DNA from: Mantamonas sphyraenae STR306
Lineage: Eukaryota > Protista > CRuMs
Assembly: GCA_026936335.1 (NCBI GenBank)
Contig: JAPMXV010000043.1
Location: 434,001-498,000, forward strand
Direction: 5' to 3'
Length of the DNA: 64,000 bases
The translations under genes were made by a program, and so were the position numbers. The notes under the pieces are model-generated. The model saw only the letters and a list, made by a program, of their open reading frames with translations. It did not search any database and had not been told where the DNA came from. Positions 10,481 through 20,332 of this stretch are shown here, in pieces (within the stretch, counting starts at the first letter, position 1; each line of letters starts with the position of its first letter).

Positions 10481-11305
10481 TCAGCCAGAGAGGAGGGGTT
10501 GCTCGTCGTTGTCGTCCTCATGATCATCCGACACCCCTTGGCCGAGGCCCGGAGAGGAGGAGGAGGAGGAATTGGATGCGGCGGCGGCACGTGCGATGCG
10601 CAGGCGTTCTTGGCGAGCTTGGTCGCGGGTGCGCTTCTTGTCTGCACGGGCAGCACGTTTTTGCTCGAGCAGAATGCTGCGCTGGAGGCGCTGTTCAGCC
10701 TTGCCGGCCTTGGAGGAGACGGAGGAGGCTGGGGAGGAGGAGGCGGAGGAGGTAGGAGAGGAGGAAGAAGAAGAGGCAGCGCTGAGCTTCTCTTGGACAG
10801 CCTTGCGACGTGCCTGCTCGGCGGCAGCGGCGGTGGTGGGGTTGATTTTGAGAGTCAGCGTGAACGTGGGCGTCATGACGGCCTCGAGCGAGTAGCCGGT
10901 GAGAGTGTTTGCACCGTCGAGCTCAAATGCAATGCCGCGCTGGAAGTATTCCTGGTTGCAGCGTGTTTTCAGGGTCTTCATGTCGCTTGCCCATGTGTTG
11001 TGCTTCTTGTGGCACCAAAAGTAGGCGAGGAAGGCAGGGGCGACACCAAACACAATGTACCCTTGCAGGTTCTTGTCGCTGAGGCAGATGACGGCGAGAA
11101 GGGCGGCGAGAAGCACTGCAGCAGCGACGATGATGGGCTTGCGTGGCAGTGTGGTGGTTGTGATCTCGTTGAAGTCGTCGATGATCTCGGCATACTCGTC
11201 GGGGCTGAGGAGGTCATTGAGTTTGGCGTTGTAGCTGTTGTCGATCTTGGGGAGGAGTCTGTCTGCATGGGACGGCAGAGTGATGGTGACAAGGTCTGAA
11301 GACAT
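10481..11305 (-). CDS. Small two-TM membrane protein, possibly Erf4/Golgin-A7-like, with a charged low-complexity tail
   Basis: YNAKLNDLLSPDEYAEIIDDFN followed by two TM helices and NQEYFQRGIAF resembles the Erf4 pattern from recall. Start context cacaATG. Confidence 0.55.
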   Translation of the reverse strand: MSSDLVTITLPSHADRLLPKIDNSYNAKLNDLLSPDEYAEIIDDFNEITTTTLPRKPIIVAAAVLLAALLAVICLSDKNLQGYIVFGVAPAFLAYFWCHKKHNTWASDMKTLKTRCNQEYFQRGIAFELDGANTLTGYSLEAVMTPTFTLTLKINPTTAAAAEQARRKAVQEKLSAASSSSSSPTSSASSSPASSVSSKAGKAEQRLQRSILLEQKRAARADKKRTRDQARQERLRIARAAAASNSSSSSSPGLGQGVSDDHEDDNDEQPLLSG

Positions 11306-11376
11306 TGTGCACACACGAGCAAGGCCAATTTTCGTGGGCCGGGGGGAGCCCAGCCGACGCCAAGAAATCACGACGA

Positions 11377-14300
11377 ATGTCCAACACGACGACGGAGGCC
11401 AGCGTGGCCGAACGCACGGCAAATCTGGACACGACGCAGCTGTGGAATCTGAGCTTGCCGTTTCTGATTCCACTGGTGATTGTGTTTATGCTGGGATGGC
11501 TGCTGCTGCACTTTAAGCTGCGGTACCGCATGAAACGCCTCAAGGTGTGGCTGATTGCGATGAACCCAGACATGTTCAACGACCTGTCGCAAGCGAGCGT
11601 CATGCCATCGCTCATTGGCATGATGGTGGCTGTGGGCCTGTTGTGGTTCGCTGTGCCTGCCCTCGTGCTGAGCTGGGGCATCACCGTGTCGGCCCTGCTT
11701 CAGCCGGACTTTGTGGGCGCAACGATCATGCTGCTGCTGTTTGCGCTGCTGTTTACGCTTGGTGCCTACTACAACTGGCGTGTGGCCAACACCTGGGTTC
11801 TGACAAGTGAGTTTTTGGCGACCGGCGTGCGCGTCGGCGCAGCTGTAGCCGTTGCGCGGGAAAAGTCGTCGCGTTTGGGCCTGTGGCGGCATCCGCAGTG
11901 GACATGTGTTGTGCAACCGCAGACGGAACCATGGGCCTGGCACGACGAATGTGGGGCGGGAGGGCAGGCGTTGGGAGTGGGAAGAGTGAGTTCCACTGAC
12001 ACGAACTGGGGGGGGGCGGTGCGTTTTCGCGGTGTGGCGGTATGCGTTTTTGGCAGAGGGCACAAAGTGGCTGTTTGCCATGGCGCTGCTGTGTGTGGTG
12101 ACCATTGTGATCATGCTTGTGTTTGTGATCCAACCCTACTCGTACCTGGGCTTCAGCGCGGTTTGGCTGTCGCTGAACATGGTGCCCATGGTGTTTGTGA
12201 TCTACTACGGGTCGCCCGGCCGCTCCATCGACTTTTCGGTGTTTGTGAACGCAGACGACCCCGCTGCTCTGCTGGAGCAGCTCAAGACTGCGCCCAAGGA
12301 CGACGAGGTTGCAGGAGCTGGACAGAACGGTGCCGGGAGTGCCGAGGAGAACGGCAGCGCCAACAACGGCACGCCTGTGGAGAACGAGCACGGCAACGAG
12401 GGTGAAGAGAACGAAGAGGGACCGGAAGGACCGGAAGGACCGGAAGAAGGCAGCCAGGCAAAGGCATCGCCGCCACAGCTGGAAATGACGGCTCAGCAGA
12501 GACGGTCGCGAATCACCATGTCGTACCTGCTTGCGCTTGTGATTCTGCTGCTGTACGGCCTTTTGGTGCTGCTGACGACCAACAAGGGCGCCGGATTGGG
12601 CTTTGCCAACGCGGCAGCTGTGTTTGTGCTTGACATCTGCATCTACCTGCTGTTTACGGCGGGCCTTGTGCGCAACCCGCTGCGTGTGACGGCTGCCCTG
12701 GTGCTGTGCCGCGCGGCGCTGATTCTGCCTGGGGCAAACTACTGGTTTGTCGGCCACAGCATCGTCTACTTTCTGTTTGCCAACTTTCTGGCATTTGGTT
12801 ACGTGCGACGCCGGTTCCCGCTGAAGTCTCTGCCGGACCCGAGCGAGGCGCGGCCGGCGGCAAAGGACCCCGAACGGTACACGGGCATTGACGACGACGA
12901 CGGCGACGACGTGGACGCCGATTTTGACGACGACGAGCTGGACAACCCCAAGGAGGACCAGGAGGGACTTGCCGGATTTGGGTCGCAGCTGCAGGATGTG
13001 CAGCTGGCAGCCCCCAAGTCGAACCGTGGCTCGGCCTGGCTGTTGCTTACGGTTTCGTTTGTGGTGGAGACGCTGTTGGCGCGATATGTGTTTGCGTCGC
13101 AGCTTGTGACGCTGCAGCTGAGCGCAGGCGGCACTGCGCAGGCGCAGGAAAACTTTGGCTGGTCTGCGCTTGCGCTGAGCATCATCCTGCCCTTGTGCTA
13201 CGTGACGCTGCGCAAGCTGCGCAACAACGCGTGGCAGTTTACGGGCGACGTCCTGCTGTGGGTGCTTGTGACCGAGGTGGTCATCGTGGCCTGTGGCCTG
13301 CTGATCAACGCGTTGACAGCCAGCGCCATTGTGCTGTACACGGCCATCTATCTGCCGCTGATTGTCCTGCTGGCCATCAACGGCTACCAGCAGTGGGTGC
13401 GCCAGGACTACGAGCTGTACCGGTACCGTCAAATGGACGCCCAAGGCAACATGGTGGGGGCAGGGGCGGCGGCGAGCGGATCGTCGTCGTCCACGGGCGC
13501 TGCGGCTGGCTCTGAGGCTGGGTCGAGCAGTGGTGGAGCGGCCGAAGCCATTGAGGCACCGCAGAACCCTGCCGCGGGCGGGAGTGGCGAGTTCCGCTCG
13601 TTTTATCGCAAGAATAGGCGTCTGTCGCTGCGCGACGATCTGAAGAACGCCGACGACTCGAAGCCCGACGGAGAGCTGTCGCTGAAGCATGTGTACGGCT
13701 ACAGGGGACATGACGCACGGTCAAATCTGTTTTACACGTCGGAGGGCGAGCTTGTGTACCACGCAGCAGCGCTGGGCATTGTGATGCATCCGGGCACGCG
13801 AGAACAACGATTCATGAGCGTGCACACAGACGACATGACGTCGCTGGCCCACCACAAGGACCTGGGGATCACTGCATCGGGTCAGATGGGCAAGCGGCCG
13901 TCGCTTGTGGTGTGGGACAGCAAGTCGATGGAAGTGAAGGCGTCGCTGAAGTTCCACAAGCGCGCCATCCCGGCGGTGGACATGAGCGCAGATGGCGAAT
14001 GGGTTGTGTCTGTCGGAGACGACGACGACCACTCCGTGTGCGTGTGGAAATGGGACGGCGAGAGCAAGATCGTGGCGTCTGCCAAGGGCCCCAAGAACGC
14101 CAAGGTGAGTTGCCTGCGCGTGAATCCGCTTGACCGCACCGAGTTTGTGACGGGTGGTGTGAAGCACATCTCGTTCTGGAAGTTGGTGAACGGCCAGTTG
14201 GAGCGCAAGAAGGGCACATTTGGCATTGGCCTGGTGACCAACGTGCTGTGTGTGGAGTACCTGCAGAGCGGGCGTGCGATTTGCGGCACCAAGGACGGCG

Positions 14301-17300
14301 ACCTGCTTGTGTGGCAGGACGGCGCAGTTGTGACGCGCATCGAAAAGGCGCACAAGGGTGCAATCTTTGGCTTGCGTGTGCTGGAGGACGGGAGCGTGGT
14401 GACGGGAGGCAAGGACGGCGTGTTGCGCGTGTGGGAAGCTGAACCCAAGACGCGCAAGCCGTTGGAAGTGCTGAAGCTGCCCGTGACGACCAAGAACAAC
14501 AAGCGAGTGTGTGTGCGTGCCATTACGTACGATGCAGAGTCGCAGCAGTTTGCGGTGGGCACCAAGGGCAACGCGGTGTACATTGTGCCGCGTGGGGACG
14601 CCGAATCGACCGAGGCGCTGGTGCAAGGGCACGCAGAGGGTGAGGCGTGGGGTATGGCTGTGCATCCGCATCATGCCAACGTGGTCGCCACAGCGTCGGA
14701 GGATAGCACGGTGCGCGTGTGGAACACCGAGACGCGAAGGGAGATTGCGTACGAATTTGTGGGATTGAAGGTGCGCTCGTGCGAGTTCTCGCCGGACGGA
14801 ACACAGCTTGCGGTTGGCCAGCGCAACGGCGGCGTGCGCGTGTATGCGTTTGCGCTGACGAGTGCGAATGTGGCGACGCTGAAGCTGCGCAAGAAGTGGC
14901 AGCACCGCAAGCGGTTTGTGGACGTGATGCGGTTCAACCCGAGCGGGACGCGACTTGCGGTGGGGAGCCACGACACGTTTGTGGACCTGTATGACGTGGA
15001 GGAGGGCTACAAGCGTGTGGGCGTGTGCAAGGGCCACTCGTCGTACATCACGCACATCGACTGGAGCGCAGACGGCAAGTTTTTGCAGACCAACAGCGGC
15101 GACTACGAGCACATGTACTGGTTTGCAAACGGAAAGCTTCAGGCCAAGGAAAAGTCGATGGCTGGGTACGAAATGGCGTCGTGGACGTGCACGATTGGAG
15201 AGGAGGTGATGGGCATCTGGCAAGGGACGTCTGACATGACGGACATCAACGCAGTGACGCGCAGTGCGGACGGCGGGGTGCTTGTGATGGGCGACGACTT
15301 TGGCAAGGTGCGGCTGTCGCGCTTCCCGTGCCCTGACTTTCCACACAAGAAGGCTGGGTACAAGAGGTACAACGGGCACAGCTCGCACGTGACGCAGGCG
15401 CAGTTCAATGCGGCGCAGGACCAGGTGTTGTCGCTGGGCGGAGGCGACACGTGCGTGTTCCAGTGGGAGTACGACGCGGCGGGCAACGTCAGCGAGAGCG
15501 GGCTTGTGGAGGTGGAGGCGCCGCGCAGGCAGGCGGTGGAAATGGTTGCGCCGCGTGTGCAGGGAGAGAACGCAGGTGCGGGGGTGGGCAGCTCGTCGTC
15601 GGGAGAGGAGGAGACGACGACGACGGCGACACCGTCGGAGCCCGGATCGTCGGACAACCGTGCGTCCAAGGCTCTGACACCGGAGGAGCTGGAGGCGCAC
15701 GAGGCGCGTAACCGTGCACGTCAGGCGGACAAGACGGTGAAGGGGCGGTACTACGGAGGCCCGGAGCCTGCGTACCAAGCGTTCTTTACGGGCAAGTTTT
15801 CGAAAGAGGACTACCAGCTGATTGGAGGCAACGTGTTGCTTGTGCTGCTTGTGTTTTTCTACGGCATGACGATTGCCCTTACGTCGACGCCCGAATACGT
15901 GGGCTGGTCGATTGCGGCGTGGCTGGGCATTGTGTTGGCGACGGCGCTGCCTGTGCTGCGGTGGTTCAACACGTTTGAGCGCGACTGGACGACGATTGCA
16001 TCGGGAGTGACGGCTGTATTGCTGCTGCTGCTGTGGTCGCTGCTTCAGGGGCTGACGACAACGTTCCCGCTGCTGGCTCTGGCTGCGCCGGGGTACGTGC
16101 TGGCGATGGCGTTTGCGTTTGCTTACTGGAAGTGGAAGGACGACGGCTACGTGATGAGCGGAAGCGTCAAGGGTGTGGTTGGTGTGGGCGTGGTGCTTGT
16201 GGTGGGCGGCATGATTGCAGTTGCGGTGACGGTGAAGCCGTGGAGTGTGGGCGTTGCTGTGCTGGTGGGCATGATTGCGCTGCTGACAAGTGCGTACGTG
16301 GCTGTGCAGTGGTACAAGAACGGATTCTACCTGCCTGCGAAGCTGCGTGTTGTGGGCGGAGTGGCACTGCTGCTGATTGTTGGCCTGGGCCTGGTGGTGG
16401 GCTTTGGGTGGGGCCGTGCTTTTGTTGGATTCAGCGTGAGTGCAGGCTGCCTGTGGCTGATCCTGGTGATGTTTGCTGTGCAGAAGCTGAACGCAGACAG
16501 CCGCGGAGATGTGGTGGTGCAGTACGGCCGCAACATCTTCCCGGTGTACAAGATGGATCTTGAGACGGAGCGGTTGACAGAGTTTAACCAGGCGCCACTG
16601 TACGCGTACACGGCGCTGGTGATCCTGCTGGCGTGGTCGATTGCTGCGTCGATTGTGATGACGCCTCCGTACGTGGGGCTGGCGATGATTGCGCTGACAA
16701 TCATCCTGTTTGTGCTGCTTACGGTGCACCTGCGCCGTGTGCCTGCGGCCAAGTTTGGAGCGGTGGCGCACATGCTGACGAAGGAGGTGCTGGAGAGCAG
16801 TGTGCAGCTTGCGCACGGCAGCCAGATGAACAGCACGACGACAACGATGGTCAAGGCAGACGAGCGGGGTGGCGAGTACGCTGGTGCAGGTGTGGCACGC
16901 GAGCGGGAAACCGTGGTGGAAGTGGAGGCGGAGCGTGGAGGAGGCGAGGCCAGCGGACGCAGGCCCGATGTGGACGACCTTCGCCTGGAGCTCGCGTCAG
17001 AGTACAAGGAGTGGTCGCTGGAAGATCTGGAGGCCAAGGTTGTGGAGCTGGAGGCTGAGCTGAAGGCTGTGTTGGCAAGCGCTGGAAACCAGAACAACGG
17101 AGGGAACGGAAGCAAGGTGAGCCCGATGATTGGATCTGGGTCTGGGCCGCGTGGACCGAGTGGCGGGGATGACGACCAAGAAGATGAAGATGAAATGGTG
17201 GAGGTGATGGAAGAGGGTGGTGGTGGTGGAGCGGGAGTGGGAGGGGGGAAGGAGGAGAACGAAGAAGACGAGGAAAAGGAGAACAAGGCAAAGAAGACGC

Positions 17301-19354
17301 AAAAGAACGAGGATGTCGTTGCGGAGCAGGTGAACACGGTGCAGAAGGCGGCAGTCAAGAGGGGTGAAGCGGTGAAGTTGGCGCAGACGATCCTTGCGGT
17401 GGAGTTTTACATCGAGAGTCGCAAGATGGAGCACAACCGGTTTGCAGCGACGGTGCAGCTGCTGTGCGTGCGCAAGACCGAGTACCTGCAAAAGAGCCAG
17501 GCGCAGGAGTACAAGCAGTTCCTGCGGGATGTGGGGCGTGCGGACGTGACGGAGGAGATGATGAAGAACTGGACGAACGACGAGCGGGTGGAATTCGAGG
17601 CGATGTTTGCGGCGTGGAAGAAGGAGCAGGCGGAGAAGGAGGAGGAAGAACTGCGCAAGCAGAAGGAGGAGGAGGAAGCGGTGAGGCGACGACAGCGGAT
17701 GCTGGAGGAGCAGGACGAGGAAAGACGTCGCAAGGAGGCGGAGGAGGCAGAACGCATCCGACAGGCCAAGCTGGCGGAGTGGAAGGAGGAACAGGAGCGC
17801 AAGGCGGCAGAGGAGGAGGAGCGCCGACGTCAGGAAGAGGAGGAGCTGCGGCAGAAGCTGGAGGAGCTGGAGGAGGAGGAAAAGGCGAAGCGGCTGGCGG
17901 AGTGGGAGGAAGAGCAGAAGCGCAAGGCGGCAGAAGAGGAGGAGCGTCGACGCAAGGAAGAGGAGGAGCTGCACAAGCAACTGCGTGCAGAGGAGGCGAC
18001 ACGTGCGGCGAACCGAGCGGACGACCTGACGGAGTACAACGCGATTGTGGAGGAGTGCAGGAGCAAGGGAGGGAAGTGGACGGACCCGGAGTTCCCGCCA
18101 GAGGAAGGGTCGCTGCGTCACGGCCAGCTGGATGTGTCGCAGATTGCCGGGTGGAAGCGTATTCCGGAGCTTGCGGAGGAGCCGCGTCTGTTTGACGACA
18201 CGATTGAGCCCGGAGACATCCAGCAGGGATCACTGGGCGACTGCTGGCTGCTGTCTGCCATGTCTGTGCTGACGATGGACCGGGAGAAGTTTGATGCAGT
18301 GTTCTTGACAAAGGAGGTGAACGAGGAGGGCGTGTACGCACTGAAGTTTTTCAAGAACGGAGTGTGGCGACAGGTGATTGTGGACGACCACCTGCCGGTG
18401 TACGAGTGGGACGCGCCTTCGTTTGCGCACTCGAAGAACCCAGCCGAGTTTTGGACGTCGATCATGGAAAAGGCGTACGCAAAGCTGCATGCGTCGTACG
18501 AGGCGATCGAGGGTGGGTTTGTGAACGAAGGATTGGTGGACATGACGGGCGGGATTGCAGACACGATTCCGTTGCAGACGGAGGAGGGAAAACAGGACGT
18601 GGCGAGTGGCAAGACGTGGCAGGTGCTGAAGGAGTATCACGCGGCCAAGTACCTGATGGGCTGCGGGTCGTTCAGTGGGTCGGACACGGACACGAACGAA
18701 AGCGGGATCGTGCAGGGCCACGCGTACAGCATTCTGAATGTGGTGGAGATGGACGGACACAGGCTGCTGCATGTGCGTAACCCGTGGGGTCGTGGTGAGT
18801 GGACGGGCGACTGGTCGGATGGGTCGCCGTTGTGGACCAAGAGGATGAAGGCAAAGCTGGGGTATGTTGACGCAGACGACGGAGCGTTCTGGATGGCGTA
18901 CGAAGACTTTGTGCTGAACTACAGGGTGGTGTACGTGTGCAAGACGTTCAACTCGCTGTGCGTGCAGACGGTGGAAAGCGAGTGGCGCGGAGAGAGTGCG
19001 GGCGGGTGCTTCAACAACGAGAGCGCTGGGAACAACCCGCAGTGGGTGGTGCGTGTACCGCGACCGATGCGTGTGGTGCTTGTGCTGGAGCAGAGCGAAA
19101 AGCGAGGCACGGGACAGGAGACGATGTGCATCGGGGTGCAGATGCTGGACAAGGGTGGGAAGCGGGCCAAGGCATTGTATGTGGGCGACAAGGTGGCCGG
19201 GTCGAGTTACGCGTACAGCCGGCAGGTGTATTGCGAGGCGAGTGTGCCGAGTGGCGAGTTTACGATTGTGCCGACGACGTTCAACGCAGGAGAGGAGAGT
19301 GAGTTTACGCTGAAGGTGATGAGCGAGTACGAGGTGGAACTGGAGGCATTGTGA
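11377..19354 (+). CDS. DEK1-like transmembrane (TML) calpain with an inserted EML-type HELP/WD40 TAPE domain. Exons 11377-11806 and 12057-19354, about 2575 aa
   Basis: More than 20 hydrophobic helices in two blocks. HELP motif LSLKHVYGYRGHDARSNLFY (~13673) and WD40 repeats ending GHSSHVT...GGGDTCVFQW (~15470). E/K/R-rich coiled coil. CysPc with an intact triad (QGSLGDCWLL, GHAYS, RNPWG), then a C2-like domain III (AGGC, NPQW, IVPTTF). Intron GTGAGT 11807..CAG 12056 restores the frame. Confidence 0.93.
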
Positions 19355-19384
19355 GGGAGAAGGTGCGAGGAGGGAGGCAACGCA

Positions 19385-20332
19385 ATGGAATCGGAAATTG
19401 TGGAGGCGGCGAGTTGTGGAGACCTCGAACGCGTGTGTCGGTTGCTGAGGAGTGGGGTCAGTGTGGATGAGAGGACATGGAGCGGGAGGACGGCGTTGAT
19501 GGAGGCGTCGCAGGAAGGGTTTGTGGATGTGGTGAGGGTGTTGCTGGACGCCAAGGCAGAGGTGGATGCGGTGCCGCGGCTGGCGGAAACGGCGTTGGCC
19601 ATGGCCGTTCGGGAAGGCCACTCGAAGGTTGTTCGCGAGTTGGTTTGCGCAGGAGCGGACACAAACGTGGCGCTGTCATCGAGAATGCCGGTGATTGTCT
19701 TTGCGTGTCAACAGGGAGACGTGGAGACGGCAAGGGGGCTGCTGGAGGCTGGCGTGGACCTCGACGTCAGGGATGAGTTTGGGAGGACGGCGCTGTGTGA
19801 AGCTGTAGATAGTGGGAACATGGAGTTGGTGCGGATGTTGCTGGAGGCGGGTGCGGAAGTGGATGAGCGTGGGAGGCAAGATGCCACGGCGCTGATGGCG
19901 GCCAGCCAAAACCTGGACGTGAGTGCGTTGTCGCTGCTGCTGGCGTTTGGCGCAGATGTCAACCACGTGGACGAAGACGGATGGAGTGCAGTGGTGTACG
20001 CGGCCGATGGAGGCGATGTGTTGGATGAGAACCAGGAAGATGGGTTGGAGCCGCTGCGACTGCTGTTGGATGCAGGTGCAGACGTGAATGTGGTGACGGA
20101 TGGAGGAATGAGTGCATTGTCGTATGCGGTGGTGCGAGAGCGATGGGAGATGGTGGACGTGCTGCTGGATCACGGGGCGGACGTGCTGGAGTGGGAGATG
20201 TGTGTGGCAATGGAGTCGCAGGATGAGGATGGTTTCGGGAAATTGGCGCAAGCCGGGGGCGATCTGAATGTGTGGACATCCAAGGAGGTGAGGGACTGGG
20301 TGGCTTTGTGGAGAGAGCGCGAGGCGATGTAG
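19385..20332 (+). CDS. Ankyrin repeat protein (~7 repeats)
   Basis: Repeated G-x-TAL-x-x-A...V-x-x-LL-x-AGA-x-V motifs. Confidence 0.92.
   Translation: MESEIVEAASCGDLERVCRLLRSGVSVDERTWSGRTALMEASQEGFVDVVRVLLDAKAEVDAVPRLAETALAMAVREGHSKVVRELVCAGADTNVALSSRMPVIVFACQQGDVETARGLLEAGVDLDVRDEFGRTALCEAVDSGNMELVRMLLEAGAEVDERGRQDATALMAASQNLDVSALSLLLAFGADVNHVDEDGWSAVVYAADGGDVLDENQEDGLEPLRLLLDAGADVNVVTDGGMSALSYAVVRERWEMVDVLLDHGADVLEWEMCVAMESQDEDGFGKLAQAGGDLNVWTSKEVRDWVALWREREAM

What the first reader, a model, noticed from the sequence alone, without database searches (positions are those of the whole stretch)
11377..19354. DEK1-type membrane calpain with a whole EML tubulin-binding TAPE domain inside its membrane region: candidate microtubule-coupled membrane protease
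Seen: a TM block, then HELP + WD40 domain (~13670-15470), a second TM block, a coiled coil, and CysPc with an intact C/H/N triad plus domain III, all in one frame. Recalled knowledge: the second TM block and linker resemble plant DEK1 (WKWKDD, KPWSVG, W..NGFYL, FVGFSV, FPVY..D, W...AS....PP.VG, W...ER..FE before the coiled coil). TML calpains are known from plants and a few protists. DEK1 has a large loop in its membrane domain and has been linked to mechanically activated Ca2+ current and cortical microtubule organisation. The EML HELP/WD TAPE domain binds tubulin. No LamG linker domain is visible here. Inference: I know of no calpain-EML fusion. It would be a Rosetta-stone link tethering a DEK1-like sensor/protease to tubulin, and it implies the loop is cytosolic.
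Basis: partly seen in the sequence, partly recalled or inferred. Interest (0 to 1): 0.88.

Follow-up and report, generated by a model that had tools for sequence, protein, structure and literature searches.

The report
DEK1-type membrane calpain carrying EML domain
The only DEK1-type membrane-anchored calpain of the flagellate Mantamonas has a complete tubulin-binding EML (TAPE) double propeller inserted into a cytosolic loop of its 23-helix membrane domain. This expressed, conserved and apparently undescribed architecture physically links this protease family to the tubulin cytoskeleton.

Summary

**What is there**
- The gene runs from 11377 to 19354 on the + strand and has two exons, not one frame. 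A 250-nt GT..AG intron (11807-12056) separates them, and a spliced cDNA contig confirms it.
- The protein has 23 predicted TM helices, a coiled-coil linker, CysPc with an intact Cys/His/Asn triad, and domain III.
- A full HELP + two-propeller EML TAPE domain lies between TM13 and TM14. It matches the EML1 structure 4CI8 at E 2.5e-96.
- The membrane domain is homologous to plant DEK1 (E 1e-22).

- The insert is not at the classical DEK1 Loop. That Loop corresponds here to a 70-aa acidic loop after TM9. The insert lies four helices further on.
- Helix parity and the positive-inside rule place the insert, that loop and the calpain all in the cytosol.

**Wider context**
- The genome's size and contig count match the published Mantamonas sphyraenae assembly.
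- A M. plastica transcript encodes the same architecture, with 65% identity in the TAPE domain.
- 90 other TML-like representatives, from Rigifila, Thecamonas, plants and others, lack the insert.
- The insert is sister to a free-standing mantamonad EML gene.
- No paper found describes this architecture.

Tubulin binding is inferred, not shown. I class it as a new variant of a known kind.

The parts
11377..11806 (+). Exon 1: start codon and TM1-TM3 (143 codons plus 1 nt)
   Evidence: ORF and hydropathy. Collinear homology to the N-terminal three-TM segment of the Thecamonas (residues 3-138, E 6e-9) and Anaeramoeba TML calpains. A cDNA contig starts at 11374.
11807..12056 (+). Intron, 250 nt, GT..AG, phase 1
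   Evidence: Sequence. The X3 contig skips exactly 11806->12057, and a low-depth unspliced piece covers 11793-12050.
12057..19354 (+). Exon 2: the rest of the protein (2431 full codons) and the stop codon
   Evidence: Uninterrupted ORF.
12062..12814 (+). TM4-TM9, with a disordered acidic loop between TM5 and TM6
   Evidence: AF2 helices at exon-2 residues 2-22, 29-51, 145-173, 180-200, 207-222 and 229-252. Homology to DEK1 residues 208-353.
12815..13024 (+). Loop 1: short acidic disordered loop, positional equivalent of the plant DEK1 Loop
   Evidence: pLDDT below 50 at residues 262-319. The flanking helices align with those flanking the DEK1 Loop.
13025..13429 (+). TM10-TM13
   Evidence: AF2 helices at residues 323-343, 364-389, 396-420 and 423-457. 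Aligns with DEK1 568-726 and Thecamonas 426-629.
13430..13663 (+). N-side tether: Gly/Ser/Ala-rich linker, then a conserved basic stretch just before HELP
   Evidence: Alignment with M. plastica. No Pfam hit.
13664..15472 (+). EML TAPE domain: HELP motif, Beta-prop_EML and Beta-prop_EML_2
   Evidence: Pfam, above the curated cut-offs. EML1 structure 4CI8 at E 2.5e-96, covering the whole domain. 65.5% identical to M. plastica.
15473..15802 (+). C-side tether, ending in the family-conserved amphipathic pre-TM14 helix
15803..16774 (+). TM14-TM23, with a conserved beta-hairpin between TM21 and TM22
   Evidence: AF2 model with mean pLDDT 87.5 and ten long helices. DEK1 785-1154 at E 1e-22. 92 relatives found.
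16775..18076 (+). Linker: poorly conserved part, a conserved DEK1-like segment and a Glu/Lys/Arg-rich coiled coil; no LamG domain
   Evidence: DEK1 1233-1307 at E 2e-6. No Pfam hit.
18077..18943 (+). CysPc protease core with Cys (18242-18244), His (18719-18721) and Asn (18779-18781)
   Evidence: PF00648 at E 9e-84. 39% identical to Amborella DEK1 over CysPc plus domain III. Residues located.
18974..19318 (+). Calpain domain III (C2L/CBSW)
   Evidence: PF01067 at E 1e-14.

Best explanation
**Shown**
- This is the single DEK1-type (MEM-Linker-CysPc-CBSW) membrane-anchored calpain of a Mantamonas genome. The assembly statistics match M. sphyraenae.
- Its membrane domain has the DEK1-like 9 + 4 + 10 = 23 helices.
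- A complete EML TAPE double propeller, about 610 residues on flexible tethers, is inserted in the loop between TM13 and TM14.
- The gene is transcribed and spliced. A second Mantamonas species has the same architecture, and there the insert is as conserved as the membrane and C2L domains.

**Inferred from helix parity and the positive-inside rule**
- The insert, the DEK1-Loop equivalent and the calpain all face the cytosol. The N-terminus faces outside.

**Inferred from a quick tree**
- The insert arose by duplication of a mantamonad EML gene before the two species split.

**Inferred from family knowledge, not tested**
- The TAPE domain binds alpha/beta-tubulin, either dimers or microtubule ends. 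It lacks the lattice-binding N-terminal region.
- That binding would hold tubulin or microtubule tips at the cytosolic face of the membrane sensor. It could either bring tubulin-associated substrates to the tethered protease or couple the cortical microtubule state to the MEM domain and so to calpain activation.
For: - **Domains:** Pfam on the ORF and the match to EML1 structure 4CI8.
- **DEK1 homology of both TM blocks, the linker and the protease:**
- **Splicing and expression:** the X3 contig lies on 11374-11806 and 12057-14934, and further contigs run to 17168.
- **Independent DNA contigs:** the 5991-nt stretch laid (11300-17290, exon 1 to the start of the linker) lies in single short-read contigs of X1 and X2, which may be source runs of this assembly.
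- **Same architecture in M. plastica:** protein P0226. Identity by domain is TAPE 65.5%, TM14-23 67.6%, C2L 66.7% and CysPc 81.3%, against 28-40% in the loops and the variable linker segment.
- **Helix counts:** AF2 gives 10 helices after the insert and 4 between Loop 1 and the insert.
- **Charge bias:** K+R is 12 on predicted cytosolic loops and 3 on outside loops.
- **Single copy:** this is the only TML calpain in the genome.
- **Origin of the insert:** it is sister to the free EML gene on contig C2, SH-aLRT 100 in two trees.
- **Family-conserved positions:** the insert keeps 92 of 118 conserved TAPE positions, against 96-100 in the organism's free EMLs.
- **TAPE function in EMLs:** it binds soluble tubulin heterodimers (PMC12182296).
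Against: - No experiment or complex prediction here shows tubulin binding. 26 of 118 family-conserved TAPE positions are changed, and the stem branch to the insert is long (0.68), so the function may have shifted.
- The trimerisation and basic region that EML1-4 use to bind the microtubule lattice is absent. Only a short conserved basic stretch precedes HELP.
- The topology rests on prediction only.
- The cDNA contigs listed leave 15502-15540 unbridged. The single ORF and the M. plastica transcript cover that gap.
- The M. plastica ORF starts near the exon-2 equivalent, so exon 1 is unconfirmed in that species.
Confidence: 0.6

Rival explanations
1. The architecture is real, but the TAPE insert has been repurposed as a general beta-propeller docking platform. 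It would bind calpain substrates, regulators or other cortical proteins and no longer bind tubulin.
For: - There is a long stem branch leading to the two inserts (0.62-0.68).
- 26 of 118 family-conserved positions are changed, and 15 of these changes are identical in both Mantamonas species.
- WD40-type propellers are generic interaction scaffolds (general knowledge).
Against: - The whole TAPE domain, including the HELP motif and the atypical second propeller, is kept and aligns end to end with EML1.
- Its retention of conserved positions is close to that of the organism's free EMLs: 92 against 96-100 of 118.
Confidence: 0.3
2. The fusion is an artefact: a chimeric assembly, or two adjacent genes read as one.
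For: Gene spacing in this genome is very tight, with the next gene only 30 bp downstream. The listed cDNA contigs have a 39-nt gap at 15502-15540.
Against: - One ORF of 2440 codons has no stop across all junctions.
- Short-read contigs of 16 kb and 27 kb hold the whole 5991-nt stretch laid.
- A cDNA contig joins exon 1, TM4-13 and the first propeller.
- An independent Trinity transcript of M. plastica encodes TM block, TAPE, TM block and calpain in one ORF of 2377 aa.
- The TM helices on either side of the insert are adjacent in every relative.
Confidence: 0.02
3. The TAPE domain faces the extracellular or lumenal side and has nothing to do with cytosolic tubulin.
For: No experimental topology exists for any DEK1-type MEM domain. 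Older DEK1 models drew the large Loop outside (my recollection, not checked here).
Against: - Ten confidently modelled helices separate the insert from the linker and the calpain, which is a cytosolic enzyme family.
- K/R clusters fall on the same side as the insert.
- EML propellers are cytosolic proteins (family knowledge).
Confidence: 0.03

Closest known systems
[quoted passage not shown] 2012 (PMC3563603)
   Same: - A 23-helix MEM domain with sequence homology in both halves.
- A conserved linker segment.
- CysPc with an intact triad, and domain III.
- A single copy in the genome.
- The loop after TM9 is at the same position.
   Different: - An insert of about 800 residues carrying a whole EML TAPE domain lies between TM13 and TM14, where relatives have 25-60 residues.
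- The classical Loop is reduced to about 70 acidic residues.
- The linker has no Laminin-G-like domain and has a long Glu/Lys/Arg coiled coil instead.
EML/EMAP family (EML1-4 with one TAPE domain; EML5/6 with three)
   Same: HELP motif plus two beta-propellers over the full length of the EML1 TAPE crystal construct. The nearest relative is a free-standing EML gene in the same genome.
   Different: The domain is embedded in a polytopic membrane protein on flexible tethers. It has no N-terminal trimerisation coiled coil or long basic region, so lattice binding like that of EML1-4 is not expected.
Other calpain-microtubule links: CAPN6, MIT-domain calpains and kinetoplastid cytoskeleton-associated calpain-like proteins; the 2026 hypothesis of calpains in microtubule-associated cytokinesis (PMC13413365)
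   Same: They associate a calpain module with the microtubule cytoskeleton.
   Different: Those are soluble or lipid-anchored proteins, and none uses an EML domain. The MIT domain binds ESCRT-III rather than tubulin (general knowledge). That paper does not mention EML, WD40 or propeller domains.
[quoted passage not shown] P0012
   Same: A homologous MEM domain and calpain. A longer loop of about 195 residues sits at the same TM13/TM14 position.
   Different: That loop has no EML or other recognised domain. They carry additional C2 and WW domains.

Membership tests
DEK1-type / Type 2 membrane-anchored (TML) calpain | Large N-terminal multi-pass membrane domain (more than 15 TM; 23 in the DEK1 model) | tested here: met
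   Three TM in exon 1 by hydropathy, plus 6 + 4 + 10 helices in the AF2 models, giving 23.
DEK1-type / Type 2 membrane-anchored (TML) calpain | Sequence homology of the membrane domain to DEK1 MEM | tested here: met
   BLASTP against Amborella DEK1 gives E 1e-22 for TM14-23, 5e-9 for TM6-9 and 0.008 for TM10-13. Plant DEK1s match at 6.6e-19 in a 5.8-billion-protein database. Matches are collinear in phmmer.
DEK1-type / Type 2 membrane-anchored (TML) calpain | CysPc core with the catalytic Cys, His and Asn | tested here: met
   PF00648 at E 9e-84. The triad residues align with those of DEK1.
DEK1-type / Type 2 membrane-anchored (TML) calpain | C-terminal domain III (C2L/CBSW) | tested here: met
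   PF01067 at E 1e-14.
DEK1-type / Type 2 membrane-anchored (TML) calpain | Long central Loop after TM9 (about 284 aa in land plants, 166 aa in Thecamonas) | tested here: inconclusive
   A loop exists at that position but is only about 70 residues, acidic and disordered. Rigifila lacks a long loop too, so the feature varies within the family.
Land-plant DEK1 proper | Laminin-G-like (LGL) domain in the Linker | tested here: not met
   Pfam finds no hit in the 434-residue linker even at E up to 1. It is therefore a DEK1-type protist calpain, not DEK1 in the strict plant sense.
EML (echinoderm microtubule-associated protein-like) TAPE domain | HELP motif followed by the two EML beta-propellers | tested here: met
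   PF03451 at 3.5e-18, PF23409 at 4.5e-55 and PF23414 at 6.3e-98, all above the curated cut-offs. 4CI8 matches query residues 11-612 to chain residues 57-653.
EML (echinoderm microtubule-associated protein-like) TAPE domain | N-terminal coiled-coil trimerisation domain and basic region (EML1-4 type; needed for lattice binding) | tested here: not met
   By inspection, the 78 residues before HELP are a Gly/Ser/Ala linker followed by a conserved stretch of about 40 residues that begins with a short basic segment. No coiled-coil prediction was run. No Pfam hit.
EML (echinoderm microtubule-associated protein-like) TAPE domain | Binding of alpha/beta-tubulin | not testable with these tools
   The complex predictor takes at most 1000 residues. 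The TAPE domain plus one tubulin exceeds that, so no job was sent.

The most novel reading that the evidence does not exclude
The fusion is a true Rosetta stone. DEK1-type membrane domains in general, including plant DEK1, would work together with tubulin or microtubule-associated proteins at their cytosolic face. In other lineages that contact would be made in trans at the TM13/TM14 loop or the neighbouring Loop. This would explain DEK1's effects on division-plane orientation and cortical microtubules.
Probability: 0.2. Interest if true: 0.85.

Novelty: new variant of a known kind. Interest (0 to 1): 0.62.

Why it matters
DEK1 is essential for plant development. It has been linked to mechanosensitive Ca2+ currents and to cell-division orientation. 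Its membrane domain has no solved structure, no experimentally settled topology and no known direct partner.

A natural, conserved fusion of this domain with a tubulin-binding module contributes three things:
- It offers a concrete candidate partner, tubulin or microtubule ends, that can be tested.
- It fixes the side of the membrane for two loops by simple parity with a domain that must be cytosolic.
- It shows that the TM13/TM14 loop tolerates an 800-residue insert, which is useful for tagging DEK1.

It also gives the recent calpain-microtubule-cytokinesis hypothesis its first piece of domain-architecture evidence. The limits are that the fusion is so far seen in only one small genus and that its biochemistry is untested.

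Tried and rejected
- **Architecture search with the EML region inside the long protein.** The list was flooded by three-TAPE EML5/6 proteins and said nothing about calpain fusions. The question was answered instead by searching with TM block 2 and scanning those hits locally for EML.
- **The look-up of encoding contigs for the M. plastica protein.** Not on record, so there is no genomic locus for that species.
- **ESM Atlas look-alikes for TM10-13 + TAPE + TM14-23.** Only ordinary EML clusters came back. This is not evidence of absence.
- **Fold search of the TM14-23 model.** Foldseek against PDB gave nothing at E <= 0.001. VIA-align wide gave a best Z of 9.1, with generic helical bundles only. 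No solved relative of the MEM fold was identified, and this does not show the fold is new.
- **The joint 13395->15609 in run X2.** Rejected: only 22 letters lie on one side, in a low-complexity stretch, and they belong to another contig.
- **The indels at 11740-11744.** They come from an unrelated contig that matches 33 nt.
- **Recent intragenomic copy of an EML gene.** Rejected: the insert is only 43% identical to its nearest paralogue.
- **Complex prediction with tubulin.** Not sent, because it exceeds the size limit.
- **Demko et al. 2014 on the DEK1 Loop.** Not held in the library.
- **Joined exon 1 + exon 2 protein.** The exons were analysed separately by reference.
Full report
**Gene model**

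The window is 60% G+C, with long runs of genes on one strand. A 2440-codon ORF (12032-19354, + strand) holds everything from a first block of hydrophobic helices to calpain domain III. That frame encodes 143 residues with three hydrophobic helices and then degenerates.

The sequence shows AAG|GTGAGT at 11807 and a pyrimidine tract followed by CAG| ending at 12056. Removing these 250 nt joins the two frames in phase 1. So the gene has two exons, 11377-11806 and 12057-19354. Each was analysed by reference on its own.

**Read evidence**

Two runs (X1, X2) may be source data of this assembly. Each holds the whole 5991-nt stretch 11300-17290 in a single short-read contig, of 16.3 kb and 27.1 kb, with 8 base differences and no indel that belongs to this locus.

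A third run (X3) is labelled 'DNA?' but behaves as cDNA:
- One 3331-nt contig at depth 200 lies on 11374-11806 and continues at 12057-14934. It skips exactly the predicted GT..AG intron.
- An Illumina adapter precedes its 5' end.
- A depth-3 contig (11793-12050) represents the unspliced form.
- Further X3 contigs (14905-15501, 15541-15644, 15615-16281, 16252-17168) mostly overlap by 30 nt, which is k-1.

One mRNA contig therefore carries exon 1, TM4-13, the HELP motif and the first propeller. Only 15502-15540 is unbridged in the pieces listed. A 'joint' 13395->15609 in X2 has 22 letters on one side, in low-complexity sequence, and is spurious.

**Domains**

Pfam (coordinates converted to window nt):

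| Family | Window nt | E-value |
|---|---|---|
| HELP | 13664-13780 | 3.5e-18 |
| Beta-prop_EML | 13802-14581 | 4.5e-55 |
| Beta-prop_EML_2 | 14648-15472 | 6.3e-98 |
| Peptidase_C2 | 18077-18943 | 9e-84 |
| Calpain_III | 18974-19318 | 1e-14 |

- The propeller region matches the crystal construct of human EML1 (4CI8) from end to end, query 11-612 to chain 57-653, E 2.5e-96. The TAPE domain is complete.
- The catalytic Cys, His and Asn are present and align with those of DEK1.
- The 434-residue linker has no Pfam hit, so it has no Laminin-G-like domain.

**Homology of the membrane domain to DEK1**

BLASTP against Amborella DEK1:

| Region here | DEK1 residues | Result |
|---|---|---|
| CysPc + domain III | C-terminal | 39% identity, E 8e-101 |
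| TM block after the propellers | 785-1154 | E 1e-22 |
| Block before the acidic loop | 208-346 | E 5e-9 |
| Four helices after the acidic loop | 534-7xx | E 0.008 |
| Linker segment | 1233-1307 | E 2e-6 |

All matches are collinear. A search of 5.8 billion proteins with the second TM block alone returns plant DEK1s at E down to 6.6e-19.

**Where the insert sits**

Hydropathy and local alignments were run against DEK1, Thecamonas calpain-B, Gefionella, Anaeramoeba, Andalucia, Rigifila and a stramenopile C2-type calpain. They show a common plan of 9 helices, a loop, 4 helices, a short loop and 10 helices.

- The classical DEK1 Loop (Amborella ~353-568; the 155-166-aa loop of Thecamonas) corresponds here to exon-2 residues 253-322. 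This loop is acidic and AF2 models it as disordered.
- The EML insert (residues ~458-1248) lies four helices further on. It falls between a conserved W-x-R-x-D-Y end of TM13 and a conserved amphipathic helix before TM14.
- Relatives have far shorter loops at that position: Thecamonas 25 residues (614->639), Gefionella about 60, DEK1 about 50, and the stramenopile protein about 195.
- Exon 1 is collinear with the first three helices of the Thecamonas (E 6e-9) and Anaeramoeba proteins. This supports the two-exon model.

**Topology**

- The AF2 model of the second TM block (41-sequence alignment, mean pLDDT 87.5) has ten long helices and a beta-hairpin between TM21 and TM22.
- The model of the exon-2 part of the first block (pLDDT 74.6) has six helices, the disordered loop, then four helices.
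- With the three helices of exon 1, the total is 23, the number in the current DEK1 model (PMC10762896).
- Calpains act in the cytosol. Ten helices upstream puts the TAPE insert in the cytosol, fourteen upstream puts Loop 1 there too, and the N-terminus falls outside.
- The positive-inside rule agrees. K+R is 12 on predicted inner loops and 3 on outer loops. Strong basic clusters follow TM1, TM9, TM11, TM13, TM15, TM17 and TM23.

All of this is prediction, not experiment.

**Organism and conservation**

The assembly has 25,061,354 bases in 78 contigs. These are the figures published for the Mantamonas sphyraenae FALCON assembly: 25.06 Mb, 78 contigs, 59.19% GC (PMC10492846). That paper does not mention calpain.

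An exhaustive HMMER search of 1.84 billion cluster representatives with TM14-23 found 92 proteins.
- The best hit, at 66% identity, is a Mantamonas plastica transcript from EukProt.
- Its longer isoform P0226 (2377 aa) has the same architecture: HELP 511-549, the two EML propellers at 558-1108, Peptidase_C2 1950-2239 and Calpain_III 2252-2366.
- A local phmmer scan of all 92 hits with the TAPE domain finds it in the M. plastica proteins only.
- The nearest other relatives lack it: Gefionella, Anaeramoeba, Thecamonas, Rigifila (the same supergroup, CRuMs), Andalucia, Paratrimastix and plants.

Identity between the two Mantamonas proteins:

| Region | Identity |
|---|---|
| CysPc | 81% |
| TM14-23 | 68% |
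| C2L | 67% |
| TAPE | 65.5% |
| Loops and variable linker segment | 28-40% |

The insert is therefore under constraint like the core domains. A profile search finds no second TML calpain in the genome, so the EML-bearing protein is the only one.

**Origin of the insert**

The genome has four other EML loci, one of them with three TAPE units. The insert is 43% identical to the closest of them, on contig C2. That is no more than its identity to foreign EMLs, so the event is old.

Two quick IQ-TREE trees were built, the second including single-TAPE EMLs from animals, algae, oomycetes and environmental protists. In both, the two inserts are sisters, and together they are sister to the C2 paralogue (SH-aLRT 100 and 100). 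A long stem leads to the inserts. Caveats: these are quick searches, there is no bootstrap, and no EMLs from other CRuMs were sampled.

The insert keeps 92 of 118 positions that are at least 90% conserved among 90 foreign TAPE units. The organism's free EMLs keep 96-100.

**Mechanism**

In EMLs, the TAPE domain binds soluble tubulin heterodimers. The N-terminal trimerisation and basic region binds the polymer. A short EML2 form without that region has been reported to follow shrinking plus ends (PMC12182296).

Here only the TAPE part is present. It hangs on a 78-residue N-side tether and a tether of about 110 residues on the C side. A short basic stretch just before HELP is conserved in both species.

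The most likely function is to hold tubulin, or microtubule ends, at the cytosolic face of the membrane domain, next to the linker-tethered protease. I put this at roughly 0.55-0.6. The main alternative is a propeller repurposed as a docking site for other proteins.

**Literature**

- The review of membrane-anchored calpains defines four types, none with WD40, HELP or EML (0 occurrences).
- The survey of 41 calpain architectures has no WD40.
- The 2026 calpain-microtubule-cytokinesis hypothesis paper does not mention EML.
- No paper in the library holds both 'Mantamonas' and 'calpain'.

The M. plastica sequence has been public in EukProt, so the data are not new, but the architecture appears undescribed.

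**Verdict**

This is a real, expressed and conserved new variant of the DEK1-type calpain. It is wrong on the frame and on the insert occupying the DEK1 Loop, and too strong on 'microtubule-coupled'.

Noticed in passing
window 11300-17290 (run X3): Run X3 is listed as 'DNA?' but is evidently a cDNA library. It has a spliced contig, adapter sequence at contig ends and depth varying from 45 to 540. Its contig starts 3 nt before the ATG, so the 5' UTR is either extremely short or truncated.
   Followed up: partly
window 13430, 15583, 16123: Single-base differences between the assembly and short-read or cDNA contigs: C>G at 13430, which would change Gln to Glu in the tether, G>A at 15583 and T>G at 16123. 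These are probably allelic SNPs of a diploid. None breaks the frame.
   Followed up: partly
G000:C57:272066-280126 (L001, L003, L004): A 2006-codon ORF with three TAPE units (EML5/6-like). EukProt protein P0018 appears to be its M. plastica orthologue, with very short branches between matching units in the tree.
   Followed up: partly
P0134 (M. plastica isoform i12): A 1080-aa isoform starts with non-homologous sequence inside the last propeller blades and ends out of frame before the calpain. It could be a retained intron, an alternative transcript or a Trinity artefact.
   Followed up: no
window 16499-16591 and 13112-13141: AF2 models two short beta-hairpins in inter-helix loops. The TM21/22 hairpin (FPVY..D motif, predicted cytosolic side) is conserved across the aligned TML calpains. 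For the TM10/11 hairpin (predicted outer side) conservation was not examined. Their role is unknown.
   Followed up: no
P0228 / P0141 (Rigifila ramosa): The TML calpain of the CRuMs relative Rigifila has neither a long Loop after TM9 nor any insert between TM13 and TM14. Both loops are therefore dispensable for the basic fold.
   Followed up: partly
window 19355-19385 and 10481-11377: Gene spacing is very tight around the calpain gene. The next ORF starts about 30 bp after its stop codon, and another ORF runs head-to-head just upstream of its ATG.
   Followed up: no
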